IMG/VR virus record: IMGVR_UViG_3300018080_000098 | Span: 248,001 to 312,000 of that record | Strand: one strand, 5' to 3' | DNA: 64,000 nucleotides | Part shown: positions 6,173 through 63,657 of the stretch, piece after piece | Layout: the number at the start of each line of letters is the position of its first letter | How positions within the stretch are numbered: the first letter of the stretch is position 1 | Program-made: the position numbers and the translations under genes | Notes under the pieces: model-generated | What the model was told of the DNA's origin: nothing | What the model saw: only the letters and a program-made list of their open reading frames with translations | Database searches by the model: none

Positions 6173-6205
6173 CTCGGGGAGGAAGTTTCCTCCCCGAGCT
6201 TTCTC
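6173..6205 (+). terminator. intrinsic terminator
   Basis: CTCGGGGAGGAA-GT-TTCCTCCCCGAG then a pyrimidine run. Confidence 0.7.
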
Positions 6206-6208
6206 CTC

Positions 6209-6237
6209 TTGACATTTCTTTTCGATTAAACTACATT
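6209..6237 (+). promoter_or_regulatory. sigma70-like promoter for tRNA-Leu
   Basis: TTGACA-N17-TACATT. Confidence 0.55.
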
Positions 6238-6255
6238 ACGTTGTATTGTTTTTCT

Positions 6256-6338
6256 GCTGGCGTGGCGAAATTGGTGATACGCGCTGGCCTTAGGAGCCAG
6301 TGGGGCAACCCGTGGGAGTTCGAGTCTCCCCGCCAGCA
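6256..6338 (+). tRNA. tRNA-Leu(TAG)
   Basis: Full cloverleaf GCTGGCG/CGCCAGC, anticodon TAG at 6291-6293, long variable arm, TTCGAGT loop; CCA not encoded. Confidence 0.93.
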
Positions 6339-6350
6339 TTAGGAGGACTT

Positions 6351-6719
6351 ATGGCAGAATTTAAGCACTGGACCTCGGAAAGTGTAGAAGCATTCAAGTA
6401 CGCTGTAGCCTCCGATTTTATTGGGCAGCTTCAAACAAGAATCGACGAGAATGAAGTTCGACAAAAAGACATCGCACGAGCGTTGGGTATTTCCGAGGCG
6501 CGTGTTTCCCAGCTGTTCAACCGACCCGATAATTTGACGTTGAGAACTCTGGTCAAGCTGGTGCGAGTTCTCGGTTTGAAGCTCAGCATCGTGGCGTACG
6601 AGGACGCACGCGAAGCTGGGCCTGTCCACCCCGATATTTTTCGCCAGTGTTGGGAAGCGATGGGAGCTCCCAAGGATATGTTTGAGCTGCAAGAGAGAAT
6701 GGAAAAGGGATCCAAATGA
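6351..6719 (+). CDS. XRE-family helix-turn-helix protein
   Basis: RQKDIARALGISEARVSQLFN..NLTLRTLVKL; AGGAGG RBS before ATG 6351. Confidence 0.8.
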   Translation: MAEFKHWTSESVEAFKYAVASDFIGQLQTRIDENEVRQKDIARALGISEARVSQLFNRPDNLTLRTLVKLVRVLGLKLSIVAYEDAREAGPVHPDIFRQCWEAMGAPKDMFELQERMEKGSK

Positions 6720-7054
6720 GCCACATAGCAGACACCATCATCGCTTTTTCCGTGTGCGACGAGGATCGCGTGCACGACATCACGAAGTATTTCGAGAGCA
6801 TCGATCAGGTCCCTCCAGTATTTTTAGACGACGGAATAAGCCCTCGCAAATACGGTGGCACCTACGCAATCCAACGAACGGTGATGGTTGGCGCCTACAA
6901 CTACTTAGACATAGACGCCCTGGTTTCTTTCATGGAAAGTCTTACGTGGGTTATCCCAGAAGACGTGCAGCTGCTTATTGCAGACGAGCACGATGAGCCC
7001 CACGTGTTTTCAGAGAGGCTCAACAGAAAAAACATGAAAACTCGCCATGGCTAA
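6716..7054 (+). CDS. hypothetical protein
   Basis: ATGA overlap with the upstream gene. Confidence 0.6.
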   Translation: MSHIADTIIAFSVCDEDRVHDITKYFESIDQVPPVFLDDGISPRKYGGTYAIQRTVMVGAYNYLDIDALVSFMESLTWVIPEDVQLLIADEHDEPHVFSERLNRKNMKTRHG

Positions 7055-7634
7055 GATTAAAACGAAACGCTACCTCGAGTGCCCGAACTGCGGTGACTAC
7101 GACTTCTCCGTGGACCACGTACTAGACAAGGACACCATCCAAAGCTACGGTCCCTGGCACTGTACTATCTGCAACCACGAAGTCCGCTTCAAAGCGGGCC
7201 AAGGTGTCCTGCAGGATGTGACTACCAAGGAGTGCCCACGCCAGCCGATGCTCTGCCTCTTCCGAATACGGGACCTCTACGTAGTTGTAGATTCGTACTC
7301 GATGCCTGATGATGGCAAGCCGGATTGGTACGATTATCTCTTCCACTCGCACCAGTGCCCAACGAACCTCGCGCGGCACGTTGTGGAAGTTTTCTGTCCA
7401 GAGGAAGGGCAAGACCCTCACGGCGTCTTTAGATTTATTGCTGCCATCCCGGACGAAGAAGATAATCGAACACTCGTCCAGGACAAGTGCACAACTCTCC
7501 AGGAGCTGTTTTTCGCGTTTCAAACAGACGGCCAGGAAGCTTGGACAAGGTGGCCCGAATCCCAACGAGGTCTCATCCCTGGACTCGCCCAGCTGCAGGA
7601 CGCCTACCGCAGAACGAATCGACCGAAGTGCTGA
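7047..7634 (+). CDS. hypothetical protein with CxxC pairs
   Basis: CPNC and CTIC; overlaps the upstream stop. Confidence 0.6.
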   Translation: MAKIKTKRYLECPNCGDYDFSVDHVLDKDTIQSYGPWHCTICNHEVRFKAGQGVLQDVTTKECPRQPMLCLFRIRDLYVVVDSYSMPDDGKPDWYDYLFHSHQCPTNLARHVVEVFCPEEGQDPHGVFRFIAAIPDEEDNRTLVQDKCTTLQELFFAFQTDGQEAWTRWPESQRGLIPGLAQLQDAYRRTNRPKC

Positions 7635-7722
7635 CAAGCTCCTTCTGCGACAACTCCATCTTGTAAAATAGAAGTATCAGGATTGTCACCAGGGTGGTGA
7701 CCGCTAAACAAGGAGAGTTGTC

Positions 7723-9330
7723 ATGTTTCGTAACGAGAAGTCTAACCTTCTGTTCCCACGCCTCGTTTTTCTCAAGGAGACCAAGTTCAGTAGTTGGGGT
7801 GGAGACGAGCACCGCTCCACGCGAGTCTACATTCTCGACTGGAGCAGTTTGGATGAGAAAGCGGTGAAGCAAGGGGTACGGTTGTTCCCTCGGGACCACA
7901 TTGACTGGCTGAACAATTTCCGGTTCGCTTTGCCGTACCACTACCGAAGTGAAATTCGTCGCTGCGTAAAGATGGCCACTTTGGAGTGGGAGCGTCCTCT
8001 AGGCTTCGACACCAGCATTCGGGAAATGTGTTTGGGAACGGCTACGAAGTATATCGACGTTGCTTTTAGATTGCTGGCGGACTGTCCCTACGATCCGGAG
8101 AAAGACTATTTTTATCGAGGGGATGATAGAGGCGTACTACCCTTCGCGTTGATTTATCGTTTCTGGGACGGTCAGACTGGACGAGGACTTCCCTGGTTCA
8201 AAAGTGGCTTGGCGAAGTATTGTGATAAGTGGCACCGACATAAAATAGAAACGGTCCACAAACCCTACTACCACGAACCCCTTGATGCTTTCATGGTTGC
8301 TGTTCAGCACAGCGAAAAAGAATACGCAGTAGTTCACGAAGCGCGCGAAGATGCATCAGAAGAGGCTGTAGCTGAGACTTCAATAGCAGCTTCCTGCAAA
8401 CATCTCAAACGTGTAGCAAAAACGACACCTGTTCTACCCCAAGCCCTTGGTGCGGCTAACGTGTACGAGTGGATTACCGACCCAAAATTCCTCGGACGGA
8501 AAGATGTTTTTCCGCAAAACATCAAACTACTCAGTACAGCGTTCCAGGAATACTGCCCCAACTGCGGTTATCGCCCAACCAAACACAAGGAATGCCCAGT
8601 TTGCAAAAAGGATGTTACTGAAGCTTTCGCACGCCCCTACCACGAAGTAGTAGGCGTACGAGGACAGCGGTCGGGGAACACCTTCCTCAGCGCTGTGGCA
8701 GCTACATATGTGCTACACAAGATTTTTCGTTTGCCTAGACCGCTCAATGAGCAGTTTGGTATGCCGCCCAATGTGGAGATCGAGATGACTTTCGTAGACC
8801 CACTTAAAGCAATCTGGGAGACCTTCTGGCGGCTCGTACATGAATCACAGTGGTTCGCTTCAGGAAGTTTACTAGCAAAGGATCCCAGCAACCTCAAAGA
8901 AGTTTTTCTTCCAGGATGCACCTTGGTTCTACGACGAACGGACCTCAACGAATGCCACAGAGGGGGCACGCGCGTCTTCGCTACCATCGACAGTCCGGAT
9001 TGGATTGAGAGAATAACTTCTTGGGGGTACTCCGTCCAAGATGTGTACCAAGCTCTCCGTAATAGCTTAGTAACTCTTCGTGGTAGACAGAATAAAAGTG
9101 GCACCGCTCCTCTACTGTTCCTTCTCGGATCTCCAAGCCCCAACAGTTTCCTGGGTTCCCTCAAAAAATCCTCACTAGATAACGACGACCGACTTTGGGT
9201 GCAACAGCCCACGTGGGAGGTCAATCCCTTTGTTACCATGGAGCAGCTCAGAAAAGAAGACATGGGAAACCCCGCGCTCTTCTTTAGAGACTACGGCGCT
9301 CAGATACCCGAGCCTTCTGAAGACGGCTAG
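7723..9330 (+). CDS. degenerate terminase-large-subunit ATPase paralog lacking the nuclease domain
   Basis: Colinear motifs shared with 21893-24175 (AANV.EW..FLG, GQRSG, RG.TR, ALxNSL.T.R, TWE.NP, RD.. near the end). Confidence 0.7.
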   Translation: MFRNEKSNLLFPRLVFLKETKFSSWGGDEHRSTRVYILDWSSLDEKAVKQGVRLFPRDHIDWLNNFRFALPYHYRSEIRRCVKMATLEWERPLGFDTSIREMCLGTATKYIDVAFRLLADCPYDPEKDYFYRGDDRGVLPFALIYRFWDGQTGRGLPWFKSGLAKYCDKWHRHKIETVHKPYYHEPLDAFMVAVQHSEKEYAVVHEAREDASEEAVAETSIAASCKHLKRVAKTTPVLPQALGAANVYEWITDPKFLGRKDVFPQNIKLLSTAFQEYCPNCGYRPTKHKECPVCKKDVTEAFARPYHEVVGVRGQRSGNTFLSAVAATYVLHKIFRLPRPLNEQFGMPPNVEIEMTFVDPLKAIWETFWRLVHESQWFASGSLLAKDPSNLKEVFLPGCTLVLRRTDLNECHRGGTRVFATIDSPDWIERITSWGYSVQDVYQALRNSLVTLRGRQNKSGTAPLLFLLGSPSPNSFLGSLKKSSLDNDDRLWVQQPTWEVNPFVTMEQLRKEDMGNPALFFRDYGAQIPEPSEDG

Positions 9331-9378
9331 CGGGTCCCCGTACTCATCTTGTAAAATACTTTGTAGAGGTTACCAGCG

Positions 9379-9660
9379 ATGATTCGGGAAATAGCTCCAC
9401 TACTCGTAATTATTCTTGCACTCCTGATTTATTTGGGGTACCGTTGGCGGTACCGATTTACGTGTCCTCACTGTGGTAGCTCAGCTAGGGCACGAATGAA
9501 GGTGGTGTTCAACCAGATAGACCAGAAAGGAAAAAGACACAAGGTGACCGTACCCGCAGCTGGCTGCGACTCGTGCGATCACTTCTGGACGTTGAAAAAT
9601 ACGCACGTGCGCACCACCGGAGTGATTATTCCGAAAGGTACGCAGATGCGAAGACCATAA
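9379..9660 (+). CDS. small membrane-anchored zinc-ribbon protein
   Basis: N-terminal TM helix; CPHC and CDSC. Confidence 0.55.
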   Translation: MIREIAPLLVIILALLIYLGYRWRYRFTCPHCGSSARARMKVVFNQIDQKGKRHKVTVPAAGCDSCDHFWTLKNTHVRTTGVIIPKGTQMRRP

Positions 9661-9671
9661 AGGAGAAATCA

Positions 9672-9887
9672 ATGAGCACTTACAGATGGCCCGATGAAAA
9701 CGAGGACGGCGGCTACGACGAAGGCACCGAGTGGGTCTGTTGCTCCTGTGGCTTCAGCCAGAAAATCGGCACAGAAGACATGGACCCACGAGGTTGCGAA
9801 CGCTGTGGCGGACCGACTTGCATGGACTGCTGGACTGATATTGGCTACTGCGCCAAATGTGAGCGAGAAACTAGGGACGAAGCATAA
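9672..9887 (+). CDS. small Cys-rich protein
   Basis: AGGAG RBS; four CxxC-like pairs. Confidence 0.55.
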   Translation: MSTYRWPDENEDGGYDEGTEWVCCSCGFSQKIGTEDMDPRGCERCGGPTCMDCWTDIGYCAKCERETRDEA

Positions 9888-9889
9888 CA

Positions 9890-10258
9890 ATGCTCGACCG
9901 GATGCACGAACAACTTGACCTGGCGCTGTCCATCGCCACGAAGGCCCACGCTGGTCAGGTGGACAAGGCTAGACAACCGTACATCCTGCACCCGCTGCGC
10001 GTAATGGCACAGCTGGATGACATTCAGGACAAAATCGTTGCAGTGCTCCATGATGTGATAAAGGTGATGGTGAGCCCCTCGAGCCCATGCAGGAGTTCAA
10101 CATCTTCGGTGTGTTCGCTCACTACCTCGCGGAAACCCTTCCCGACGGCAGCGACGCTCAGAAAGTCTGTCAGTCCACCTTCGAGCAAATACAAAAACTC
10201 GTGCTGGAGTGGCGCGCGTCCACTCTCGGAGAAGCTATCGTGGTGGCAGACAAACTAA
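9890..10258 (+). pseudogene. truncated HD-domain hydrolase (RelA/SpoT hydrolase-like)
   Basis: AH.GQ.DK..QPYILHPLRV..VAVLHDV, after which similarity ends and the frame turns low-complexity. Confidence 0.6.
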
Positions 10259-10296
10259 GGAAAGGCTACGATGGCAGCTAGAATTAAAGGAACATA

Positions 10297-10659
10297 ATGA
10301 GTGACCCCACCGACAACCAAACGACTCCTGAGGAGCTCTACGAGTACATCGTGAGATGTCTCCGCAAGTCTCTGGACCCACCCACGCGGGATACTATCCG
10401 CCGCGCCCGAGAAACACTCCTCAATCAGGTTGACGAGTCCACAGCTGACTACGTGAAGGTGGCGCAATCCCGTGGTGTGAAGTTCGACAGCGGTCTCACA
10501 CTGGACGTGCAGTTCCGCTACAACCGAGACCTAGAGGTGTGGGAGTTCGTCAAGCTAACACAGAGCGGTGAAATAGAGTTGCCCAAGCCACTCAAGTTCG
10601 TTGCCACCAAGTTTCTAGTAGACGAAAAGTTCTGGCAAAATGAAGATGAGACTGACTAA
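10297..10659 (+). CDS. hypothetical protein
   Basis: ORF with RBS in a co-oriented cluster. Confidence 0.55.
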   Translation: MSDPTDNQTTPEELYEYIVRCLRKSLDPPTRDTIRRARETLLNQVDESTADYVKVAQSRGVKFDSGLTLDVQFRYNRDLEVWEFVKLTQSGEIELPKPLKFVATKFLVDEKFWQNEDETD

Positions 10660-10891
10660 GCCTATCCTCGTCCGCTGGGCCAACCACCACAAGAAGGACT
10701 TCGAGCTCGGAGACCCCGAAGTGACCATCACACTTCCCGTGGGCACCGAGGTCAAGCTGGAAGCACAGTACACAATCAACTCCGGAAAAATATTCGACTA
10801 TGCTACGCTGGAGCTCTGTGACTTCACCTACAAAAATCCCTTGTCAGGAATCACCTCGAGAGGTACAATACCTGCTAGTTGCTTGGAGTGA
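10640..10891 (+). CDS. hypothetical protein
   Basis: Overlapping operon packing. Confidence 0.5.
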   Translation: MKMRLTKPILVRWANHHKKDFELGDPEVTITLPVGTEVKLEAQYTINSGKIFDYATLELCDFTYKNPLSGITSRGTIPASCLE

Positions 10892-11136
10892 GAACCGCAG
10901 TGAAAGAAGCAGAACGTTACGAGAAGTTCCTCAGAAAACGCTGTCCCGATCTCAGCGAAGAAGACCTCGCGCAAGAGCTCGAGATACTAGCGTCCATGAA
11001 TGCAGCGCAGGACATAGCGGTGTACACTTGCAAATGTGGCCGTACGCATTACGTGGAGTACGTGCCACCACCTCACGCGTACTACCCACGGAGTTCCATT
11101 TGCGCGTGTGGGCACGAGGTGGTGTTTGGAGAATAA
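10888..11136 (+). CDS. small zinc-binding protein
   Basis: CKCG and CACG; GTGA overlap. Confidence 0.5.
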   Translation: MRTAVKEAERYEKFLRKRCPDLSEEDLAQELEILASMNAAQDIAVYTCKCGRTHYVEYVPPPHAYYPRSSICACGHEVVFGE

Positions 11137-11143
11137 TGGTTGC

Positions 11144-11226
11144 GCGGCCATGGCGAAATTGGCAGACGCAGCGGGTTTAAGCCCCGCTGGAGTAATTCCG
11201 TCCGGGTTCGAATCCCGGTGGCCGCA
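11144..11226 (+). tRNA. tRNA-Leu(TAA)
   Basis: GCGGCCA/TGGCCGC acceptor, anticodon TAA at 11178-11180, long variable arm, TTCGAAT loop. Confidence 0.92.
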
Positions 11227-56049: not shown

Positions 56050-57534
56050 TCAAGGATAACAATCCATAGGGCAGATGGCGTAGACTTCCAGACCGTCGCA
56101 GATACCGTTGCCGCAAGTAGAGAGGCAGTCAGGCGGACAATTGTTCATCGTTTCTCCCATATCGCACGAACCGTCACCGCAATTCTGAGCACAATCGAGG
56201 CTACAGTTGCTATACGCTTCCCCATAACCAACTGCACAGATACCATCACCGCAGCTTCCGGGGCAATCCTGCTGGCAGGTCACCCAGGTTTCTGCGCCAT
56301 CGCAAAGATTGTTTCCGCAGACACCAGCACCGCAATCAGCTGGGCAGCTACCCGCGTCCTCTCCATGAATAGCCAGGCACAATCCGTCACCGCAACTGGT
56401 GCCACAATCCATAGGACAGCTAATAGGGCCTTCGCTGCCTTCGCAAGTGCCGTTGCCGCAGACGTTGGGGGGACAGTCGAAGGAGCAGTTTAGAGAATTC
56501 TCCCCGAGAGAGATCTCGCAGGTACCGTTGCCACACAGCCCGGGTCCGCAATCCTGTGGGCAGCTTTGTACATCCTCAGTGGGTTCGCACAAGCTGTTAC
56601 CGCAAACGTAGGTGGTTGGGCAGTCCTGCGGGCACGATATGGCGTTGTCGGCAAAGTTGGGATCGCAGACACCGTCACCGCAGATGGGCCACGTACAGTC
56701 TTCTCGGCACGCATCCGGTGTGGTGTCGCTATTGAAGACGCCGTTGTCGCACGCCTCGCCAGTTTCTTGAATGCCGTTACCGCAGACGGGGCTAGTGGGC
56801 TCGGTTTCGCAGACGGCGTTACAACCGTCCCCGTCGACGGTGTTTCCGTCGTCGCACTCTTCCCCAGTGTCCTGGACGCCGTCGCCACAGTAGGCCACCA
56901 AGCAATTCAGCCGACAAGCGTCGGGCTCGGTATCGGAGTTGTCGACTCCGTCGTCGCACTCTTCACCCGGTTCTTGAACTCCGTTACCGCAGAAGGGGTC
57001 GGTAGGTTCGGTTTCGCAGATGGAGCTACACCCGTCCCCGTCGACGGTGTTACCGTCGTCGCACTCTTCCCCGGTATCTTGGACACCGTCCCCGCAGAAG
57101 GGGACCTCGCAATCGAGGCGACATGCGTCGGGTTGCGAGTTGGAGTTGCTGGAGCCGTCGTCGCAGGCTTCCCCGACCTCTTGGATACCGTTGCCGCAGA
57201 CGGGGTCCGCCTCCGTTTCGCAGGTACCGGAGCAACCGTCTCCGCTGGTGCTGTTGCCGTCGTCGCACTCTTCTCCGGTGTCCTGCACACCGTCTCCGCA
57301 GTAGAAGACGGTGCAGTCGAGGCGACACGCGTCCGGTTCCGTATCGGAGTTAGCCGCGCCGTCGTCGCACTCCTCGCCCCAGTTCTGAACTCCGTCCCCG
57401 CACTCTCCTGGGTTGTCGTTCTGGTTTATGTTGTTGGCGTTGGTGCCAGCGTCGTTACCGTTCGTGAAGGTGTCTCCACTCGTACCACAGGCAGCCAGCA
57501 TCAGTACCATTAGCAGTGCAAAAATTCGTTCCAT
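56050..57534 (-). CDS. lipoprotein with Myxococcus-type Cys-rich repeats (DUF4215-like)
   Basis: Lipobox LAAC; repeats CGDG.Q..GEECDDGN...GDGC...C, then CG(N/D)G.C...E....CP.DC. Confidence 0.85.
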   Translation of the reverse strand: MERIFALLMVLMLAACGTSGDTFTNGNDAGTNANNINQNDNPGECGDGVQNWGEECDDGAANSDTEPDACRLDCTVFYCGDGVQDTGEECDDGNSTSGDGCSGTCETEADPVCGNGIQEVGEACDDGSSNSNSQPDACRLDCEVPFCGDGVQDTGEECDDGNTVDGDGCSSICETEPTDPFCGNGVQEPGEECDDGVDNSDTEPDACRLNCLVAYCGDGVQDTGEECDDGNTVDGDGCNAVCETEPTSPVCGNGIQETGEACDNGVFNSDTTPDACREDCTWPICGDGVCDPNFADNAISCPQDCPTTYVCGNSLCEPTEDVQSCPQDCGPGLCGNGTCEISLGENSLNCSFDCPPNVCGNGTCEGSEGPISCPMDCGTSCGDGLCLAIHGEDAGSCPADCGAGVCGNNLCDGAETWVTCQQDCPGSCGDGICAVGYGEAYSNCSLDCAQNCGDGSCDMGETMNNCPPDCLSTCGNGICDGLEVYAICPMDCYP

Positions 57535-57590
57535 GGTAAAATCCTCCCAAAAAATCAATGTCCCCAGTATTGACGATGTCAAGAAAGATG

Positions 57591-58085
57591 TCAAGAAAAT
57601 TGTGGTGAGGTTGCACGAGTAATGAGCCAAAGAAGCATATACACTTCCTCGCTTCTATCGAGTTCCACGGAGAATTGTTTCTTGTTGTCAGCGTACGCAC
57701 CGAAAACGCGCTCATCCGGAAAACCCTCGAAGTATACACCATGAATGGATTCTTCCGCATATTTCCCGAAAAGATCGTGAAAATCCACGTCGATTTCCAC
57801 TGGTGAGTCAACCGACACTTTGTAGTCGTGAAAATTGTCGCGAATAGTGAAAACGACCCCTCCTGGGGTACGTAGTTCCACGACGGGTAGTCTAATAGAC
57901 TTAGAAGTGTGGGTGCTGATTACTATAGGCTTCAGTGTCTTATACACCTTATAATCTGCGCCTGGGGGACAAACTGCCCACGTCAAACGGTGGAAGAAGT
58001 CGAATTGCACGTGTGCAGCTTTCTTCCACACCATTTCATCTGCAGGAACATTCTCCTTGCACCACTCTTCGAGCGTAATGGTCAT
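57591..58085 (-). CDS. hypothetical phage protein
   Basis: AAGGAGG RBS, supplied by the end of pentamer array 1, before ATG 58085. Confidence 0.65.
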   Translation of the reverse strand: MTITLEEWCKENVPADEMVWKKAAHVQFDFFHRLTWAVCPPGADYKVYKTLKPIVISTHTSKSIRLPVVELRTPGGVVFTIRDNFHDYKVSVDSPVEIDVDFHDLFGKYAEESIHGVYFEGFPDERVFGAYADNKKQFSVELDRSEEVYMLLWLITRATSPQFS

Positions 58086-58093
58086 CGTAACCT

Positions 58094-58170
58094 CCTTGGA
58101 TTGCCTTACCAGGCGTGGCCAAGCCAAGCCATACCGTGCTCCACGGTACCAAGCACCACGCAGCCACGCC
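58094..58170 (-). repeat. pentamer array 1 (NGY-NN x14, then TCCAAGG); candidate guide ncRNA
   Basis: GGCgt GGCtg CGTgg TGCtt GGTac CGTgg AGCac GGTat GGCtt GGCtt GGCca CGCct GGTaa GGCaa; 14/14 units in phase. Confidence 0.85.
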
Positions 58171-58179
58171 CGGTAAAAT

Positions 58180-58767
58180 CTACGCCACCGCTTCAGCGTC
58201 GTCCTCGACCACCTCCCATCCAGTCACCTGGAACTTCCCGAAGGTTCCCTTCTTCGTAGGCCGGTAGTCGCCCAGCCCCACACGCTTCCCCGCAGCCTCC
58301 ACGATGTCGTGAATGAGGTTTACATCGAACACATCCTCGTCCACCTCGAGCGTGAACTTCAGCTTCCACTTGTCCAGGCGTGCCCGGTGGCGCAGCACCG
58401 CACCCTTCGTGGAGGGATTCACCACCCGGCGGCTGTCCACCTCGAACTTCTTCGTGCCAAACGAGCACGTGAGCTCCTCTACCGTCACGCCTCCCGTGAG
58501 CAGCGTCCCACTCGTTGTGGTTACCTTGTTCTTTCCCAGCTTGAAGAACTTCCCGGCCTCGATGAGACACGCCAGGATGTTGGTCCCCGGGAAGTGGAGC
58601 ATTCCCTTGTTGTCCATGTAGGCGCTCCGTTCCGCTTCCTCCCGTGGCGCGAGCTTCTTCTTGCGCGTCGGGCGGTGCCCCGCCGAGAGCTCCATCTCCG
58701 CCGCGTCGGTGAACCGGTTCATGAGTAGGGGGGTTTTTCCTTCGATTTGCACTTTCACAATGGCCAT
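58180..58767 (-). CDS. stand-alone RAMP/Cas7-like RRM protein
   Basis: Beta1 VQIEGKTPLLM, FPGTNILACL, C-terminal Gly-rich loop GLGDYRPTKKGTFGKF; no other cas genes in the window. Confidence 0.7.
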   Translation of the reverse strand: MAIVKVQIEGKTPLLMNRFTDAAEMELSAGHRPTRKKKLAPREEAERSAYMDNKGMLHFPGTNILACLIEAGKFFKLGKNKVTTTSGTLLTGGVTVEELTCSFGTKKFEVDSRRVVNPSTKGAVLRHRARLDKWKLKFTLEVDEDVFDVNLIHDIVEAAGKRVGLGDYRPTKKGTFGKFQVTGWEVVEDDAEAVA

Positions 58768-58869
58768 GGCGTCTGTTCCTTTCTGTTCTGTGATCTATTC
58801 CTCGCCTAACAATACCCCGTCCCAATGGCCACTAATCAAAGGGGACGGGCTTCGCGCAACATTGCGCGC

Positions 58870-59079
58870 CTAATCAATGCTTCTACTTCGCTGCCACGCG
58901 AAACAGCCCTCCGCGCCCACGCACCCCAGCCACAACACCCACACCCACCAGGGCAGCACAAACAATGCCAGGTAATCGTTGAACGCTACCGCTAACGCTA
59001 CCAGGAAGAGCACCGGTCCCATTCCTAGCACGGCGACAGTAACGGTAAACACCCTAAATATTTTTATCAAGAAGGTCAC
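58870..59079 (-). CDS. small membrane protein
   Basis: Hydrophobic, two TM helices. Confidence 0.5.
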   Translation of the reverse strand: MTFLIKIFRVFTVTVAVLGMGPVLFLVALAVAFNDYLALFVLPWWVWVLWLGCVGAEGCFAWQRSRSID

Positions 59080-59860
59080 CTGATGCCCAGAAACCTGCGT
59101 CCTTCAAGATAGCTTCACACTCCTGCCGATAGCCCTTCTTGAGCTCGATTACGTTCACACCCGGGTGGCGCATCAACCACAAACCGAACACGGAATTGGT
59201 AGCCACAATAAACTGCACTTTCCCAGAGCACCCCTCACGCTGCACCCACTGCCACAACGGGAGTTTGGTAGGCCAGTCCAGAACAGCGTCAGGCTCGTCG
59301 AGAAGAACTGTTGGAGGCCCCTTTTCAATAACAGGCTCGAGCAGCTCTTGCGCCATCTTGATTCTGTGCGCCCATACGTCGTTCACGTTGTTCGGGGTAA
59401 TTCTCCAATTGATGCTTTCTTCCTGCGAGCGCTGTACTAGACGCATAAAGCGTCCTGCAACCTGCTGCCCTGCAGATCCCTTGTCGGTTGCATTTATGAC
59501 ACCCTCCATCCCAAAATCCCAATCGAATCCACCTCCCACTAGCCCCACTTGTACAGAAGGGTCAAAGTACATCACAGACTTTCCATCAGACTTGATGGAC
59601 ATGTTCTTCCTGGGGGTATTTCGGAAACCGAACCCAAAGAGCTCATCAATTGACTGCTGGGTAACTGTAGAAGTTCCTCCCTGTTCGCAGTGCGTGATCC
59701 GCGCCAGCGCTTTTATTACCGTGGACTTCCCCGACCCATTCGGGCCCCAGAGCACGTTGACACACGGCTCAAAGTTGAACGTACGCCGTTTAGGGAACGG
59801 TTTCGACCACCACGTAATGGGTGGCTTGTCTCGATTTATTACCTTCAGCTGCTCGATCAT
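59054..59860 (-). CDS. ABC-type/AAA ATPase
   Basis: GPNGSGKST, SAGQ, VLLDEPD. Confidence 0.8.
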   Translation of the reverse strand: MIEQLKVINRDKPPITWWSKPFPKRRTFNFEPCVNVLWGPNGSGKSTVIKALARITHCEQGGTSTVTQQSIDELFGFGFRNTPRKNMSIKSDGKSVMYFDPSVQVGLVGGGFDWDFGMEGVINATDKGSAGQQVAGRFMRLVQRSQEESINWRITPNNVNDVWAHRIKMAQELLEPVIEKGPPTVLLDEPDAVLDWPTKLPLWQWVQREGCSGKVQFIVATNSVFGLWLMRHPGVNVIELKKGYRQECEAILKDAGFWASGDLLDKNI

Positions 59861-60669
59861 CAGTCCACCGCACAGTAGTATCCAGGCATCGGACGCTGCA
59901 GGTTGCCCTTTTTAAGCTGACGCTGCAGGTACTTCGAGATGGCGTTGTTGGTGGGAATCGCTTTGCGGGGAACGCTCTTGTTTGCCTCCAAAAGCGCTCG
60001 CAAGTCCGTCACCGCGAGCATCTCGTACTCCGCTAGCAGCTTGTCCGCTGGGTCCATCCAAGCTGTCCGAGGCTTACCACCACGGACATTTTTCTTCCGC
60101 TTGGACGCGTTCTTACCGTTGCCCTTCTTCGCCCTAGCAACAGCTTTCTTCTCTACCTTTTTGTTCATGAACGGAGACTTGGCTCCATCCCGCCATCGGT
60201 AAGCGCCCTTCGCTACTTTGACAAGCTTCTTCTCCTTGGCAAGCTTGTCGATGTAGTACCACACCAACCCGTAAGTGATGTCATTGTACATGGGCGACAG
60301 CTCCATGGTCAGATAGGTGACAATGTCCACTACCGAGTGCGCTTTTTTGGTACTGAAGAACTTGCGCGCAATGGCTTTCTTCGCGTCCTTAAAAGAATGC
60401 TCAGGAGGAGATTGAGGACGTTTGACCGCTGCCTTCATCTTTTCTACCCGTTGCTTCCCCTCCTCGAGCTCCTCCATGTCTTTCAGCTTTTCCAGTGCTT
60501 GTGTTACTGCAGTGTACACGCCACCTGTTTTTACAAGCTCGCGCTGAGCCTGCTCAAGTATGCGCTTCTGCTCCACCATCAGTTTCTGGAGCTCCTCACT
60601 CTGCTTGATGAGGAGAGCCCTCGTGTGGACGATCGCTTCCGGTTCTGCTGCCTTCTTTTTTCGAGACAT
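59860..60669 (-). CDS. coiled-coil plus two winged-helix-like DNA-binding domains
   Basis: KLAKEKKLVKVAKGAY and RQLKKGNLQRPMPGYY wing motifs. Confidence 0.5.
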   Translation of the reverse strand: MSRKKKAAEPEAIVHTRALLIKQSEELQKLMVEQKRILEQAQRELVKTGGVYTAVTQALEKLKDMEELEEGKQRVEKMKAAVKRPQSPPEHSFKDAKKAIARKFFSTKKAHSVVDIVTYLTMELSPMYNDITYGLVWYYIDKLAKEKKLVKVAKGAYRWRDGAKSPFMNKKVEKKAVARAKKGNGKNASKRKKNVRGGKPRTAWMDPADKLLAEYEMLAVTDLRALLEANKSVPRKAIPTNNAISKYLQRQLKKGNLQRPMPGYYCAVD

Positions 60670-60749
60670 TAATAATCACCTCCGAGAATTGTTTCTCAGT
60701 GATACCAACCCCCACTTACGTTGTCAAGAAAATAATAGGAGGGAATAAG

Positions 60750-60806
60750 CCTTGCGTTGCACCGCCCAGGCTGACAGTGCTACGGTGCACCATAGCGCAC
60801 GTGGCT
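60750..60806 (-). repeat. pentamer array 2 (11 units, ends CGCAAGG)
   Basis: 8/11 units are NGY-NN; starts at the stop of the upstream gene. Confidence 0.6.
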
Positions 60807-61962
60807 ACCGTTTCGCTACACGTTCCGTCTTTTCCCATACACGCCACCGAAGATGAACGCCGTCCACCATCTCCATCCGAGCCCAGTGTACCCGCTTTTT
60901 CGGACCTTCCTTCCAACCGGTGACCCACTCCTTCTCCGCTTTCTTGATCCACGTCGGCAGCGTCGGAGACATCGGACCCGTTTCTCCCTTCAGCCACACC
61001 AGGCACTGGTCTGCCGGGATGTGCTTCTGCACAGCCGTCGTCCAGAAGGAATACTCGGTGCAGCGAGTCAAGAAACGAAGCTGCTCGATGAAACCGGTGA
61101 GACGGCTCTTCAACGACCGCGCAGCCTTGAAGTCCTCCTGCGTAGCCTCGTAAGGCGTGTACTCTCCCTCGAGCTCCACACCGTCCACTTTCGCCTCGAA
61201 GGCCCACACCTTGATAGCCTCGTCCTCACCTACCTTCTCACTCTTCGGCCACTCCGGCGGCTTAATGTCGAGCTCCTCCCGCAACCGCTTCACCTCCGCG
61301 CGCAAAAATCGAAGCTCGTCCTCCAACCGCGAAATAGCAGCCTTCGCCACCAGATAGTACACCCCGTAGAAAGAAGGCCACCGCATCGGGTGTACCAGGT
61401 ACTGGAACCGCAACTCGTTCGCCGCACCGCTCAGCTTCTCGAACACGTCGTTCGGCAAGCCCGTCGGCATGATGTCCACCGATTCCCAACCCTTGTACCA
61501 CTTCCCCGTCACGTCCTGCAGCAGCATCGCCCGGTAAGCTCCCACCTCAGCATCCGTCGTCCCGTCTTCCTTGGTTTTCGCTTGGATAACATTCATATCC
61601 TCAATACGAATACCGAATGAGAATGCTGCTTTGTTGGAGGTGAGCCCACTCAAACGACCGTGCCGGTTCTCCTTCGACGTGACCCACTCACCCTCACGTT
61701 TCGTGGACGCGCGGCGCGATTGGTACTTTGGCAGATTCACTACCACCCGGTTCTCTACCAGCGGCGTGAGAAAAGCTGCCAGGTCCAGGTCGGTTACCGG
61801 AACACCATCCGGGTCTACCCAGGCTACTCCGGGCTTCCGCTTGTCGAGGTTGTACCCCCACGCATCCAGTAGCCGTTTGCAGAGGACGCGCATGTCCTCC
61901 TGTCTGTTCTTGACGATGTCCAGGTCCCGAGCGTCGATTGTTTTTCTTTCTGACGTTACCAT
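60805..61962 (-). CDS. hypothetical protein
   Basis: True start probably ATG 61962 (MVTSERK); the longer ORF reads through arrays 3 and 4. Confidence 0.65.
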   Translation of the reverse strand: MVTSERKTIDARDLDIVKNRQEDMRVLCKRLLDAWGYNLDKRKPGVAWVDPDGVPVTDLDLAAFLTPLVENRVVVNLPKYQSRRASTKREGEWVTSKENRHGRLSGLTSNKAAFSFGIRIEDMNVIQAKTKEDGTTDAEVGAYRAMLLQDVTGKWYKGWESVDIMPTGLPNDVFEKLSGAANELRFQYLVHPMRWPSFYGVYYLVAKAAISRLEDELRFLRAEVKRLREELDIKPPEWPKSEKVGEDEAIKVWAFEAKVDGVELEGEYTPYEATQEDFKAARSLKSRLTGFIEQLRFLTRCTEYSFWTTAVQKHIPADQCLVWLKGETGPMSPTLPTWIKKAEKEWVTGWKEGPKKRVHWARMEMVDGVHLRWRVWEKTERVAKR

Positions 61963-61985
61963 GTTCTCTGTCTCCTGTTGACTAT

Positions 61986-62042
61986 CCTTGCAATGCCTTA
62001 GTGGGCATAGGCTCGCTTTGCCACTCCCAGCCTGAGCACACT
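61986..62042 (-). repeat. pentamer array 3 (11 units, ends TGCAAGG)
   Basis: 7/11 units are NGY-NN. Confidence 0.55.
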
Positions 62043-62068
62043 TCGTATTACTATCTTTACAAGATGAA

Positions 62069-62170
62069 CCTTGGACTACGATACGCTGCCACGCATTAGA
62101 CGCCATCGCAATATATTGCGCTACGATGCCTTGCACTACTTGGCGTCACCACACTCTGCAACACTCAACC
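62069..62170 (-). repeat. pentamer array 4 (19 units, then TCCAAGG)
   Basis: 16/19 units are NGY-NN. Confidence 0.8.
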
Positions 62171-62176
62171 AAGAAA

Positions 62177-62563
62177 CTACTCTTCTTCAATGCGCTCCGG
62201 CAAAGCGTACGTGTGCTGCGCCCAGATGTAAGGCTTCAGCAAACTGGCTACTCGTATGTACTCAGGATTTTCCTGCGCCCACTTTTTAGCTCGTTTGGTT
62301 GCCTGCTCGAAAATGCTTTGCGCTTGCCTGTATGTAAAAGTGAGTAGGACTTCGTCGTCACCATCGTGATCGATTGCTTTTTGTGCTTCCTCCAGAACAA
62401 TTAAGCAATCCAGGCAGATAGGTGAAACCAGATACGCACCACTGAACTTGGTGGTACTTTCGTTGAAACGTCTGTCACATTGGGAACAAGTCAGACCGTT
62501 CACTGAAGGGAACCGTTGCTCTCGTGGGACCTCTTCCTTCCGTTCGTAGCTCCATTTGTACAT
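62177..62563 (-). CDS. hypothetical protein with CxxC pairs
   Basis: CSQC and CLDC; RBS from the end of array 5. Confidence 0.6.
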   Translation of the reverse strand: MYKWSYERKEEVPREQRFPSVNGLTCSQCDRRFNESTTKFSGAYLVSPICLDCLIVLEEAQKAIDHDGDDEVLLTFTYRQAQSIFEQATKRAKKWAQENPEYIRVASLLKPYIWAQHTYALPERIEEE

Positions 62564-62571
62564 AACAAACT

Positions 62572-62648
62572 CCTTGCAGCGCTTTACTCCACTTCACACT
62601 AGCTAGCCACACACCGCCGAGCTCCACAGTACTTCGCCGGGCGACGCC
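62572..62648 (-). repeat. pentamer array 5 (15 units, ends TGCAAGG)
   Basis: 14/15 units are NGY-NN. Confidence 0.8.
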
Positions 62649-62651
62649 AGG

Positions 62652-62939
62652 TCAGTCTTTCGACAACTCCAACGGAACACACGTGTCCACACACTGCTCA
62701 AAGCACTTCTTGTGCTTCTGCAGCACCTTTTCTTTGTAGCGATCTTTCAGTACGGATTCGGTAGGGAGGTCGAAATAGTAAAGCGCACTGATCACGACAG
62801 CCGAGCACAGGATTTCGAGGAAAATAACACGCCAGCCTATCCCGCCCTTCTCGCTGAACCAGTTGTTCAGCAGAGCTGAAAGCACGATTACGCCCATGCA
62901 GATACTGACACCCATCACGATGATTTCGTTGTGCGTCAA
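62652..62939 (-). CDS. small membrane protein
   Basis: Two TM helices; RBS from the end of array 6. Confidence 0.55.
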   Translation of the reverse strand: MTHNEIIVMGVSICMGVIVLSALLNNWFSEKGGIGWRVIFLEILCSAVVISALYYFDLPTESVLKDRYKEKVLQKHKKCFEQCVDTCVPLELSKD

Positions 62940-62947
62940 AACAGACT

Positions 62948-63014
62948 CCTTGCCTCACCGGTCCACGCTCCACCGAAGCTTGCCCCACGCAGCCCCGCCA
63001 CTCCGGGCGATGCC
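62948..63014 (-). repeat. pentamer array 6 (13 units, ends GGCAAGG)
   Basis: 10/13 units are NGY-NN; two of the exceptions are GGA. Confidence 0.75.
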
Positions 63015-63028
63015 TGGTGCGTTTATTT

Positions 63029-63100
63029 CCTTGCCAAACCATACGTGACCATACCATTCCGCGGGTTGCGGTTCCGAGACGAGCGGCGCCACTCCGGGCC
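63029..63100 (-). repeat. pentamer array 7 (14 units, ends GGCAAGG)
   Basis: 9/14 units are NGY-NN; three of the exceptions are GGA. Confidence 0.7.
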
Positions 63101-63657
63101 TAGTGATTGCTGATCCGCTTGTGGGGAAGGTTCTGGAAAACGTTTCCGTGCTCGAGTGTTGTGGACACGTCACCATCGTTGTCACTGTACGCGAACCGAA
63201 GGATAACCTTTCCTTCATTCTCCTCCAAAAATTTTCGCGCAGCTTCTTCTTGATTTGCATAGATTTCTTTTTCTTCTTCCTCGCGCGCTTTGTCCCTTTC
63301 GGGACCTTTTTCTTTGTACTTCTCCCAATAGTGCTTTCTGTACTGCCTACTGGTGTAGCACCCTGGTATTCCGGGGATCTCCTTTTCGATGTAGAACATG
63401 TCCCAGTACACGAGGTTGTGCAGATCGTCCGCGATGGTCTCGAGAGAGTAGGGAAGCTTGTGCAGCTGCGCTTGTATGTCATTCCACACGACTTGCGCGA
63501 GTGTTTTCGTGGGGACTGGGTCACCGTAAACATCCAGCTCTTGTGTGTCTCCAAACAGAAGCTCCTGCAGGGCGTCAGCACTTTCAGGGATCTCGTCGAA
63601 CGCCACAATGAAAGAGGAGCTCGAGCTGTTACTCACGAATCCGTTACGAATTTTCAT
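63100..63657 (-). CDS. conserved phage protein with MKIRNGFVSNSSSSSF N-terminus
   Basis: Recognisable N-terminal motif; GGAGG RBS. Confidence 0.7.
   Translation of the reverse strand: MKIRNGFVSNSSSSSFIVAFDEIPESADALQELLFGDTQELDVYGDPVPTKTLAQVVWNDIQAQLHKLPYSLETIADDLHNLVYWDMFYIEKEIPGIPGCYTSRQYRKHYWEKYKEKGPERDKAREEEEKEIYANQEEAARKFLEENEGKVILRFAYSDNDGDVSTTLEHGNVFQNLPHKRISNH

What the first reader, a model, noticed from the sequence alone, without database searches (positions are those of the whole stretch)
58085..63100. Arrays sit between genes and their CAAGG end doubles as a ribosome-binding site
Seen: arrays 1, 2, 4, 5 and 7 start within about 10 nt of an upstream stop codon. In arrays 1, 5 and 6 the end extends to AAGGAG just before the next start codon; in 2, 3, 4 and 7 CAAGG is kept without that role. 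Arrays 3+4 and 6+7 are tandem pairs. Array 1 also self-pairs (TTACCGGGCGTGGC/GCCACGCCTGGTAA). Inference: guides are cut from a polycistronic mRNA at CAAGG. Alternatively, protein binding controls translation of downstream genes, or the arrays act as recombination points for gene cassettes.
Basis: partly seen in the sequence, partly recalled or inferred. Interest (0 to 1): 0.62.

Follow-up and report, generated by a model that had tools for sequence, protein, structure and literature searches.

The report
VIPR guide-RNA arrays between phage genes
The "arrays" are real pentamer-repeat (YNNGG) guide-RNA genes of VIPR, a phage RNA-guided silencing system first described in 2026, lying beside its Cas7-like Vipr gene in a 350-kb phage. 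Here they are wedged between protein genes, so their last repeat, CAAGG, often also serves as the next gene's ribosome-binding site.

Summary
All genes in 57.5-64 kb lie on the minus strand. Seven intergenic elements (11-22 units each) are in-register arrays of degenerate pentamers, Y-N-N-(G)-G, and each ends in CAAGG. Over 106 units, position 1 is C/T in 93%, position 5 is G in 86% and position 4 is G in 52%. This phasing is far beyond chance and occurs only in intergenic DNA.

The arrays match vrRNAs of VIPR systems (bioRxiv 10.64898/2026.04.26.720920: 9-16 YNNGG repeats bound by a ~20-kDa ancestral RAMP). The 195-aa gene at 58180-58767 is a Vipr homolog. Its family profile hits PDB 36pp "SUSP1 Vipr protein" at E = 6e-15, its model matches Csm3/Cas7, and its G-loop GDYRP aligns with SUSP1 GDWRP.

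The genome (349,793 bp, an uncultured sediment phage) holds about 20 such arrays, most of them over 22 kb and interleaved with ORFs. CAAGG is a conserved 3' terminal unit across this clade, whether or not a start codon follows. In arrays 1, 5 and 6 it forms AAGGAG exactly 8 nt before the start codon.

Relatives gain and lose genes exactly between arrays. No RNA data exist, no target was found, and cleavage at CAAGG is untested. I rate this a new member of a known kind with an architecture not described in the text I could read.

The parts
58180..58767 (-). vipr gene: a 195-aa Cas7-like ancestral RAMP and the only copy in the genome.
   Evidence: A profile of 61 homologs matches PDB 36pp_D 'SUSP1 Vipr protein' at E = 6.4e-15 over nearly the full length. 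The single sequence gives E = 2.2e-4, with GDYRP aligned to SUSP1 GDWRP. The AF2 model has pLDDT 87.4. The top Foldseek hits are all Csm3/Cas7/Cmr4. There is one copy in the genome.
58094..58173 (-). Array 1: 16 pentamer units, 6 nt after the vipr stop codon. The end CAAGGAGG is the SD of the 164-aa ORF, whose start codon lies 8 nt on. The array is also a long hairpin.
58800..58849 (-). A GC hairpin (CCCGTCCCC...GGGACGGGG) running into a 4-unit remnant array (CGGGG TATTG TTAGG CGAGG), upstream of vipr. The relative L007 has GCAAGG here where this phage has GCGAGG.
   Evidence: L007 8839-8959.
60750..60804 (-). Array 2: 11 units, starting directly after the stop codon of the 385-aa gene. It is followed by a sigma70-like promoter box and not by a start codon.
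60698..60735 (-). A copy of the phage's recurrent sigma70-like promoter motif (TTTTCTTGACAACGTAAG...GGTATCAC), downstream of array 2.
   Evidence: The same motif is seen in many intergenic gaps. It is not scored by the simple scanner.
61986..62045 (-). Array 3: 12 units, in the leader of the 385-aa gene downstream of the CTTGTAAAGATAG box. It is absent at this position in relatives L007, L010 and L012, so it is an insertion or deletion of a whole array.
62069..62178 (-). Array 4: 22 in-phase units with an internal CAAGG at 62129-62133. It is possibly two abutting guides. It overlaps the stop codon of the 128-aa gene by 2 nt.
   Evidence: Orthologs are present in L007, L010 and L012.
62572..62651 (-). 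Array 5: 16 units, starting directly after the stop codon of the 95-aa gene. The end CAAGGAG is the SD of the 128-aa gene (ATG 8 nt on).
   Evidence: L010 has the ortholog with no gene after it.
62948..63017 (-). Array 6: 14 units. The end CAAGGAG is the SD of the 95-aa gene (TTG 8 nt on). The NN letters of units 3-10 are identical in all three phages, and those of units 1-10 are identical between this phage and L007.
63029..63103 (-). Array 7: 15 units. The first unit, CTAGG, contains the stop codon of the 185-aa gene. It is followed by 11 nt and then array 6.
59860..60669 (-). A 269-aa protein, a candidate accessory (vap-like) DNA binder. The evidence for a winged-helix/HTH fold is weak.
   Evidence: Pfam AbiEi_4 at E = 0.0028, below the cut-off. 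The Atlas feature search gives HARE-HTH at 0.89, a lead only. It is syntenic in L007, L010 and L011 and shows no homology to the neighbours of vipr in L127.
59054..59860 (-). A 268-aa P-loop ATPase (AAA_23/ABC-like) between the candidate vap gene and vipr. It is present in some relatives only.
57591..58085 (-). A 164-aa ORF translated from the SD formed by array 1. It is absent in L007.
60805..61962 (-). A 385-aa conserved protein of unknown function, flanked by arrays 3 and 2.
62177..62563 (-). A 128-aa ORF between arrays 5 and 4. It is present in L007 (45% identity) and absent in L010.
62652..62939 (-). A 95-aa ORF between arrays 6 and 5. It is absent in L007 and L010.
63100..63657 (-). A 185-aa ORF (phrog_7397) upstream of array 7.

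Best explanation
The elements are vrRNA genes of a VIPR (Viral Interference Programmable Repeat) system carried by a 350-kb uncultured phage.

How the system works, taken from the published systems and not tested here:
- Vipr, the 195-aa Cas7-like RAMP encoded at 58180-58767, polymerises along each RNA with one protomer per pentamer.
- It holds the G-G-Y scaffold and exposes the two variable N letters.
- The N letters pair with double-stranded DNA under a one-nucleotide-skip rule, and this silences transcription of competing mobile elements.

Particular to this phage, as the sequence shows:
- The arrays are not gathered beside vipr. They fill the gaps between protein genes of same-strand operons, starting at the upstream stop codon.
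- They end in a conserved terminal unit (YNNYG-CAAGG) instead of a long structured tail.
- In about half of them that unit is also the Shine-Dalgarno sequence of the next gene.

Inferred, not shown:
- The guides are released from multi-gene mRNAs, or are simply protected within them by the Vipr filament.
- Vipr loading at the 3' end would hide the ribosome-binding site, coupling guide production to translation of the downstream gene.
- The shared array ends act as junctions at which accessory genes are gained and lost.
For: (1) Repeat format. Right-aligned on CAAGG, 18 arrays keep a 5-nt register for 60-80 nt. Over the 106 window units, position 1 is Y in 93%, position 4 is G in 52% and position 5 is G in 86%, while positions 2 and 3 are near-random. 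The arrays hold 11-22 units. The preprint defines vrRNAs as 9-16 YNNGG repeats and lists YNNNG variants.

(2) Statistics and specificity. Arrays occur only in close relatives (L007-L013). None occurs in L014 or in about 0.55 Mb of other phage loci.

(3) The Vipr protein. The G-loop G-D-Y-R-P aligns with SUSP1 G-D-W-R-P. It corresponds to the D-Y-R triad that reads G1, G2 and Y3 in the P. fulva structure.

(4) Indels between orthologous arrays are whole units of 5 or 10 nt. NN letters are mostly unrelated between orthologous arrays while the scaffold is kept. In array 6 all substitutions across three phages fall outside the NN letters of units 3-10.

(5) A 53%-identical vipr in an unrelated small temperate phage (L127) is flanked by arrays. 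One ends in GCAAGG, one ends in CAAGG CAAGG, and the third, just upstream of vipr, ends in GCGAGG CAAAG.

(6) No self-target appears under the 1-nt-skip rule, as the preprint reports for its systems.

(7) No CRISPR machinery or ribozyme was found that could explain the arrays otherwise.
Against: - There is no RNA evidence at all. Only three DNA metagenome runs hold the sequence.
- No target was found. Three 8-unit and two 9-unit seeds against IMG/VR gave nothing, or only chance-level extension.
- The roughly 40-nt structured 3' tail of the characterised type II vrRNAs is absent. Information content drops to about zero right after CAAGG.
- The first G of GGY is kept in only about half of the units.
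- No clear vap gene was identified.
- Array 1 folds into a strong hairpin that would compete with filament assembly.
- The arrays lack their own promoters and terminators, so their release as small RNAs is an assumption.
Confidence: 0.85

Rival explanations
1. The arrays are mainly cis-acting mRNA operators. Vipr, or another oligomeric RNA-binding protein, coats the pentamer tract. This controls translation or stability of the flanking genes, as TRAP does on (G/U)AG-NN repeats or T4 gp32 on its UUAAA-repeat leader. Trans-acting guide function would be secondary or lost.
For: The arrays lie inside operons and abut stop codons. In the window, 3 of 7 place AAGGAG exactly 8 nt before the start codon. 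Genome-wide, about 11 of 19 place a start codon 7-12 nt after the last G. No DNA target was found. There is no long tail.
Against: The arrays without a downstream gene (A2, A4, A7) keep full length and the CAAGG end. NN letters turn over between relatives while the scaffold is kept, as expected for guides. L127 has arrays of the same kind flanking its vipr. No TRAP or CsrA homolog was found. This reading is compatible with the best explanation and is not strictly an alternative to it.
Confidence: 0.1
2. The arrays are primarily DNA-level recombination sites that bound mobile gene cassettes, like integron attC sites or the PeSL 'mobile regulatory cassettes' of T4-type phages.
For: Between the conserved 185/190-aa and 385-aa genes the content differs. 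This phage has A7 A6 [95 aa] A5 [128 aa] A4 A3. L007 has A7' A6' [130 aa] A4'. L010 has A7' A6' [RtcB] array A5' A4'. The 164-aa gene with A1, and the ATPase, are also present or absent. Each difference is bounded by arrays.
Against: No tyrosine integrase was found in the genome. The shared motif is only 6-12 nt. Only A1 has inverted-repeat structure. The strict 5-nt register and the adjacent Vipr gene are not explained by this reading. Cassette turnover is more simply a by-product of repeated, similar sequences.
Confidence: 0.04
3. The arrays are decaying pentanucleotide microsatellites or G-quadruplex-forming (GGNNN)n tracts with no protein partner.
For: They are G-rich with GG every 5 nt in about half of the units. 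CTTGG CTTGG-type perfect repeats occur in A1.
Against: GG count is not above expectation. Positions 1 and 5 are constrained while 2 and 3 are free. The register is kept through units that lack GG. Orthologous arrays with unrelated sequence keep the pattern. The arrays co-occur with a Vipr homolog in two unrelated phage backgrounds.
Confidence: 0.01

Closest known systems
VIPR systems (Vipr + vrRNA), especially the characterised type II loci of Escherichia phage SUSP1 and a Pseudomonas fulva prophage. Sources: bioRxiv 10.64898/2026.04.26.720920, 10.64898/2026.04.26.720927 and 10.64898/2026.10.15.759431.
   Same: A small Cas7-like RAMP with a conserved G-loop. Guide genes of about 10-16 YNNGG pentamers with free NN letters. 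Phage-borne. No cas genes or CRISPR array. No self-targets.
   Different: About 20 arrays, most spread over 22 kb and interleaved with protein genes, instead of 1-4 beside vipr. No ~40-nt pseudoknot tail, only a conserved last unit or two (YNNYG-CAAGG). The last unit overlaps the Shine-Dalgarno sequence of the next gene. The first G of GGY is weak (52%). The accessory gene is unclear. The host is unknown and the phage is jumbo-sized. Vipr is only distantly related to SUSP1 Vipr (single-sequence E = 2e-4).
Solo/orphan vrRNAs on phages and satellites (bioRxiv 10.64898/2026.10.15.759431).
   Same: Arrays lie away from vipr. One here lies 97 kb away, at genome 209,378-209,448.
   Different: Here a vipr gene is present in the same genome. 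The published solo vrRNAs keep the type II tail.
Class 1 CRISPR backbone (Cas7/Csm3 on crRNA).
   Same: The RAMP fold (Foldseek top hits). One protomer per fixed step of the guide.
   Different: A 5-nt step rather than 6 nt. No repeat-spacer array, Cas6, Cas5, large subunit or adaptation genes.
TRAP of Bacillus on (G/U)AG-NN repeats, and the T4 gene 32 operator with UUAAA repeats.
   Same: A 5-nt-period protein-binding tract in an mRNA leader that can cover the ribosome-binding site.
   Different: No TRAP homolog. The unit sequence differs. Those tracts are purely cis regulators.
PeSL mobile regulatory cassettes of T4-type phages, and integron attC sites
   Same: Repeated intergenic elements at the borders of variable accessory genes.
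   Different: No promoter-plus-stem-loop unit. No integrase. The element has its own RNA-guide identity.

Membership tests
VIPR system | A Vipr protein: a small (~20 kDa) RAMP homolog with an RRM core, G-loop and thumb. | tested here: met
   195 aa. The family profile matches PDB 36pp 'SUSP1 Vipr protein' at E = 6.4e-15. The single sequence gives E = 2.2e-4, with GDYRP aligned to GDWRP. AF2 pLDDT is 87 and Foldseek hits Csm3/Cas7 at E about 1e-6 and TM about 0.5. Invariant glycines are G160, G164, G174 and G177, with G166 nearly invariant.
VIPR system | vrRNA genes made of 9-16 tandem YNNGG units (conserved GGY, variable NN). The preprint allows YNNNG/NNNGG variants. | tested here: met
   Seven arrays of 11-22 units in the window and about 20 in the genome. 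Y1 is 93%, G5 is 86% and G4 is 52%, and positions 2 and 3 are free. The phasing is significant against shuffles.
VIPR system | An invariable 3' tail after the repeat tract (~40 nt, a pseudoknot in the SUSP1 clade). | tested here: not met
   There is no conservation after CAAGG. What follows is an SD and start codon, a promoter box or another array. Only the last one or two units are conserved (YNNYG-CAAGG), and they are also found in L127. The tail is described for type II. Its status in the other types could not be read because the figures are not held.
VIPR system | An adjacent accessory gene (vap) with a DNA-interacting function. | tested here: inconclusive
   The 269-aa neighbour has weak winged-helix/HTH signals only. 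There is no PDB match. It is not shared with L127.
VIPR system | Arrays expressed as ~100-nt RNAs that co-purify with Vipr. | not testable with these tools
   No RNA run holds the sequence. Laying the contigs gave nothing on RNA.
VIPR system | NN letters match DNA of competing elements under the 1-nt-skip rule, with no self-targets. | tested here: inconclusive
   No self-target appears above the shuffled-unit null. IMG/VR seed scans for arrays 1, 5, 6 and 7 gave no secure target. The best was 24 of 28 NN letters for array 6, on an SF2 helicase motif I in L098, which is within chance for a database of that size.
CRISPR-Cas (crRNA array processed by Cas6) | Direct repeats of 25-40 nt alternating with spacers, together with cas genes including a processing RAMP. 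| tested here: not met
   No such repeats were found. There are no Pfam RAMP or Cas6 hits in the genome.
TRAP-type attenuation | A TrpBP-family ring protein and (G/U)AG triplets at 5-nt spacing. | tested here: not met
   There is no PF02081 hit. The conserved letters are G then Y at the unit border, not NAG.
Integron-like cassette array | A tyrosine integrase and imperfect inverted-repeat attC sites after each cassette. | tested here: not met
   There is no PF00589 hit. Only array 1 is an inverted repeat.

The most novel reading that the evidence does not exclude
In this Vipr clade, guides are not made from dedicated small-RNA genes. They are carved or protected out of protein-coding multi-gene mRNAs. 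Vipr nucleates on the conserved 3' CAAGG unit, which is at the same time the Shine-Dalgarno sequence. Each transcript would then yield either a guide or a translatable downstream message. The RNA-guided silencer would thereby also act as a translational operator for about ten neighbouring genes. The array ends would further serve as the junctions at which accessory genes (RtcB, small ORFs, an ATPase) are swapped between related phages.
Probability: 0.25. Interest if true: 0.6.

Novelty: new member of a known kind. Interest (0 to 1): 0.45.

Why it matters
VIPR was described only in 2026, and its characterised examples are compact loci: vipr, vap and a few tailed vrRNAs. This locus shows the same protein and repeat code in an uncultured 350-kb sediment phage, at much larger scale and in a different layout. 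It has about 20 arrays, no long tail, and guides embedded in operons that share their last unit with ribosome-binding sites.

The text of the VIPR preprints that I could read says nothing on how vrRNAs are matured. It also does not mention any link to translation. This locus offers a natural case in which both questions can be tested.

The locus also gives comparative evidence that arrays evolve by whole-unit indels, that guides turn over at fixed positions, and that neighbouring genes are exchanged at array borders. The underlying kind of system is already known, so the main result is a correct annotation and not a discovery.

Tried and rejected
- Common RNA structure: only array 1 folds better than shuffles. 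Rfam gave nothing at gathering score or at E <= 1, so no hammerhead.
- G-richness or GG enrichment as the signal: rejected. GG count equals the expectation from G content, and the coding strand is G-rich anyway.
- CsrA, TRAP, Cas6, RAMP (Pfam), RNase III and tyrosine integrase in the phage genome: none found.
- Near-identical or related records in the phage collection by megablast: none.
- IMG/VR relatives of the 385-aa protein: none.
- IMG/VR scan with the promoter motif: found only a fragment of the same phage, L004.
- IMG/VR scan with the array-6 core: none.
- Metagenome scan with the 185-aa protein: besides this phage itself, nearly all hits were distant relatives of 25-40% identity, with a few short or partial matches higher. 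None carried arrays.
- Target search by the published 1-nt-skip rule:
  - Own genome plus 0.63 Mb of held loci: nothing above the shuffled-unit null.
  - Exact 9-unit seeds for arrays 5 and 7: zero hits.
  - 8-unit seeds for arrays 6, 1 and 5: 31, 22 and 14 hits. None extended beyond chance, except one 24-of-28 match for array 6.
  - The conserved NN letters of array 6, read as codons, spell Q-I-P-V-G-C-G-K-S-G, a Walker A / helicase motif I. The best match is an SF2 helicase ORF in L098. About five such matches are expected by chance in a database of that size, so this is a lead only.
- RNA evidence: no RNA runs exist, and laying the three DNA runs showed only the source contig and short identical pieces.
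- vap identification: no PDB match, no homology to the genes beside vipr in L127, and only weak winged-helix leads.
- Loci for P0001, P0006, P0099 and P0157: returned without DNA.

Full report
WHAT IS THERE

The window is bases 248,001-312,000 of a single 349,793-bp IMG/VR virus record. The record has direct terminal repeats and is rated complete. It comes from a sediment metagenome.

Read in the sense of the genes, the gaps between genes are 55-230 nt long, and each contains one or two elements that end in GCAAGG or CCAAGG.

As a bare 5-mer, CAAGG is not enriched in the window: 144 were seen and 149 expected. GCAAGG on the minus strand, however, clusters at genome 306-328 kb, and there it is almost entirely intergenic.

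THE KEY OBSERVATION: A 5-NT REGISTER

I right-aligned 18 of these elements on their final CAAGG. They turn out to be arrays of pentamers kept in one register for 60-80 nt.

Over the 106 units of the seven window arrays the composition is as follows:
- Position 1 is C or T in 93% of units, and G in 1%.
- Position 5 is G in 86%.
- Position 4 is G in 52%.
- Positions 2 and 3 are close to random.

CAAGG is simply the last unit of each array.

The total number of GG dinucleotides is not above what the G content predicts. The signal is therefore the register and not G-richness.

I scanned the genome with a 10-unit window scoring Y at position 1 and G at position 5. Scores of 17 or more out of 20 occurred at 103 positions on the minus strand, against 0-6 in block-shuffled genomes.
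- On the minus strand nearly all clusters scoring 17 or more are non-coding and lie at genome 306-328 kb. Exceptions each scoring 17 lie in non-coding DNA at 227.6 kb, at 207.6 kb (coding fraction 0.25), and inside called ORFs at 339.2 kb and 172.8 kb.
- On the plus strand the highest-scoring clusters include one array at 209.4 kb (score 18). They also include a score-18 stretch inside a called ORF at 281.1 kb, a score-17 stretch inside a called ORF at 54.2 kb, and complementary-strand echoes of the minus-strand arrays.

Among 0.63 Mb of other fetched loci, arrays are found only in close relatives of this phage.

Array coordinates:
- A1: 58094-58173, 16 units.
- A2: 60750-60804, 11 units.
- A3: 61986-62045, 12 units.
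- A4: 62069-62178, 22 units, with an internal in-phase CAAGG at 62129.
- A5: 62572-62651, 16 units.
- A6: 62948-63017, 14 units.
- A7: 63029-63103, 15 units.

Starts: A1 begins 6 nt after the upstream stop codon. A2 and A5 begin directly after it. A4 overlaps it by 2 nt and A7 by 4 nt.

Ends that double as a ribosome-binding site: A1, A5 and A6 end in CAAGG followed by AG(G). The start codon follows exactly 8 nt after the last G in all three.

Ends without that role:
- A2 is followed by a copy of the phage's recurrent sigma70-like promoter box.
- A7 is followed by 11 nt and then A6.
- A4 is followed by a CTTGTAAAGATAG box and then A3.
- A3 ends 23 nt before a gene that has its own AGGAG.

Structure: the hairpin in A1 is real (MFE -46.9 kcal/mol, z = -4.5). 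The other arrays are not unusually structured.

Outside the window the same pattern continues.

WHAT THE ARRAYS ARE

A full-text search for pentanucleotide repeats in phage intergenic regions returned a 2026 preprint describing VIPR systems. Its main points are these:
- VIPR systems are phage-encoded.
- They have a ~20-kDa ancestral RAMP protein (Vipr), usually with an accessory gene (vap).
- They have guide RNAs (vrRNAs) of fewer than 100 nt, made of 9-16 YNNGG repeats. The GGY letters are a protein-bound scaffold and the NN letters carry specificity.
- The NN letters pair with double-stranded DNA with one target base skipped per unit.
- The outcome is transcriptional silencing of competing phages, satellites or prophages.

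A companion structural preprint shows one Vipr protomer per repeat. It names the residues that read G1, G2 and Y3, including a D-Y-R triad in the G-loop.

A later survey recovered 99 clusters of 5-nt-period arrays next to Vipr-like folds.

The window arrays fit the published definition, including the allowed YNNNG variant.

THE PROTEIN

The 195-aa gene at 58180-58767 lies immediately upstream of array 1.
- It has no Pfam family.
- It belongs to a large family of ~190-aa metagenomic proteins.
- A profile of 61 members matches PDB 36pp chain D, "SUSP1 Vipr protein", at E = 6.4e-15 over residues 3-182 against 4-188.
- The single sequence gives E = 2.2e-4, with its GDYRP aligned to SUSP1 GDWRP.
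- The AlphaFold model is confident: pLDDT 87.4 and pTM 0.81.
- Its best Foldseek matches in the PDB are all Csm3, Cas7, Cmr4 and type VII Cas7 subunits, with E about 1e-6 and TM about 0.5.
- The invariant or nearly invariant residues G160, G164, G166, D167, R169, P170, G174 and G177 form the glycine-rich loop.
- It is the only copy in the genome.

Pfam's RAMP and Cas6 models, CsrA, TRAP, RNase III and tyrosine integrase are all absent from the phage.

COMPARATIVE EVIDENCE

The 385-aa neighbour has metagenomic homologs, and their contigs could be fetched: L007-L009 at 89% identity, L010-L012 at 86%, L013 at 60% and L014 at 53%. Flanking proteins are only 45-86% identical to those of this phage.

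Four things stand out.

First, arrays are present at syntenic positions in L007, L010, L012 and L013 but not in L014.

Second, length differences between orthologous arrays are whole units of 5 or 10 nt. The NN letters of most orthologous arrays are unrelated while the scaffold pattern is kept, which is guide turnover at fixed sites. Array 6 is an exception. The NN letters of units 3-10 are identical in all three phages, and those of units 1-10 are identical between this phage and L007. All substitutions across units 3-10 fall on scaffold positions.

Third, gene content changes exactly between arrays:
- This phage has A7 A6 [95 aa] A5 [128 aa] A4 A3.
- L007 has A7' A6' [130 aa] A4'.
- L010 has A7' A6' [RtcB] array A5' A4', with no gene between the last two arrays.
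- Array 3 is a whole-array insertion relative to L007, L010 and L012.
- The 164-aa gene with array 1, and the ATPase, are also variably present.

Fourth, a 53%-identical vipr lies in an unrelated small temperate phage, L127, which carries a serine recombinase. It is flanked by arrays:
- One ends in GCAAGG.
- One ends in CAAGG CAAGG.
- The third, directly upstream of vipr, ends in GCGAGG CAAAG.

The terminal CAAGG is thus a feature of this Vipr clade and does not depend on any downstream gene. The penultimate unit also has its own signature: Y instead of G at position 4 in 14 of 18 arrays.

HOW THIS LOCUS DIFFERS FROM THE PUBLISHED SYSTEMS

The characterised type II vrRNAs carry an invariable ~40-nt structured tail. 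Here, conservation stops at the last G.

The architectures named in the preprint's text are the following:
- arrays beside vipr;
- staggered overlapping arrays;
- hammerhead-interspersed arrays;
- single vrRNAs.

I found no hammerhead. I also found no mention of processing, polycistronic transcripts or ribosome-binding sites in the preprints.

In this phage about 20 arrays are mostly spread over 22 kb and alternate with ORFs. One further double array lies 97 kb away, at genome 209,378-209,448.

I could not see the figures or supplementary tables. I therefore cannot exclude that one of the seven published types already shows this layout. For that reason I rate the finding as a new member of a known kind and flag the layout as possibly new.

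MECHANISM

Shown here:
- the repeat format;
- the Vipr homolog with conserved G-loop residues;
- the position of the arrays inside same-strand operons;
- the overlap with Shine-Dalgarno sequences;
- the conservation of the terminal unit;
- unit-wise evolution of the arrays;
- cassette-like variation in the neighbouring genes.

Taken from the literature and not tested here:
- filament assembly with one protomer per unit;
- DNA recognition with a 1-nt skip;
- transcriptional silencing of competitors.

Inferred:
- The arrays are transcribed as part of multi-gene mRNAs, because five of the seven start at a stop codon without a promoter box.
- They are released or protected from those mRNAs.
- Vipr bound to the 3' unit would hide AAGGAG and so repress the next gene.

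TARGETS

I applied the published scan, with NN letters joined by one wildcard. No self-target exceeds the shuffled-unit null, which agrees with the preprint.

Exact seeds against IMG/VR gave no secure target.

The conserved NN letters of array 6, read as codons, spell Q-I-P-V-G-C-G-K-S-G, a Walker A or helicase motif I. The best extension was 24 of 28 letters, in an SF2 helicase ORF of L098. By my estimate about five such matches are expected by chance in a database of that size, so it is only a lead.

LIMITS

There is no RNA evidence. The vap gene is unidentified: the 269-aa neighbour has only weak winged-helix signals. The host is unknown.

The operators' limit for read laying was respected (5,016 letters).

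Noticed in passing
genome 209,378-209,448 (+ strand; outside the window, 97 kb from vipr): A further in-phase array of 14 units with an internal CAAGG (6 + 8 units) lies in an intergenic gap of a plus-strand operon. The ORF starting at 209,800 has the SD GCAAGGAG. It resembles the 'solo' vrRNAs described for other phages.
   Followed up: partly
L010:8556-9716, and the contig of P0001 (no DNA returned): In two relatives an RtcB RNA ligase gene occupies the variable slot between arrays, where this phage has the 95-aa and 128-aa ORFs. RtcB joins 2',3'-cyclic-phosphate and 5'-OH ends, which is notable next to RNAs that may be cut out of mRNAs.
   Followed up: no
window 60698-60735 (-), and many intergenic gaps genome-wide, for example genome 2.4, 4.7, 6.8, 14.4, 334.3, 346.8 and 347.7 kb: There is a recurrent sigma70-like promoter motif, TTTTTCTTGACAACGTAAAG-N-TGATATTTT, often followed by GAAACGGAGAAA before the start codon. 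It probably marks early promoters read by the host polymerase.
   Followed up: partly
window 62051-62068 (-); also genome 105.8, 131.9, 147.1, 158.7 and 300.3 kb, and L007, L010 and L014: A second recurrent box, (C)CTTGTAAAATA, lies upstream of many genes and is conserved in relatives. It is likely a phage-specific (middle or late) promoter. Array 3 is inserted just downstream of one copy.
   Followed up: no
genome 0-20 kb and 329-349 kb (outside the window): The motif GGTTTAACCGAAC(G) recurs next to GC-rich hairpins, and CTCTCTATACAAAAT boxes recur near both genome ends. Their function is unknown.
   Followed up: no
window 56050-57630 (-): A 526-aa Cys-rich protein with DUF4215 repeats is encoded by ~207-nt tandem DNA repeats of 74-78% identity. 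It is conserved downstream of vipr in L007 and L013.
   Followed up: no
window 60805-61962 (-), and genome 27,150-28,274: The 385-aa protein flanked by arrays is the most conserved gene of the region (86-91% in relatives whose other proteins are 45-75% identical). It has a 31%-identical paralog in the same genome and has no Pfam or PDB match.
   Followed up: partly
window 1540-11226 (+): There are four tRNA genes (Ser-TGA, Cys-GCA, Leu-TAG, Leu-TAA) and a truncated tRNA-like match at 1901-1954.
   Followed up: no
window 62948-63017 (array 6), and L098:383-2213 (reverse strand): The NN letters of array 6, conserved in three phages, read as codons for QIPVGCGKSG (Walker A). Many IMG/VR seed hits fall on P-loop motifs of ATPases and helicases. 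This hints that the guide is aimed at a conserved catalytic motif of a competitor's gene.
   Followed up: partly
L014:4424-5215: The 53% relative that lacks arrays in the fetched 21 kb carries an Apyc1-like (anti-Pycsar) metallo-beta-lactamase-fold gene. It is homologous (67%) to this phage's 264-aa gene at genome 314,151-314,945.
   Followed up: no
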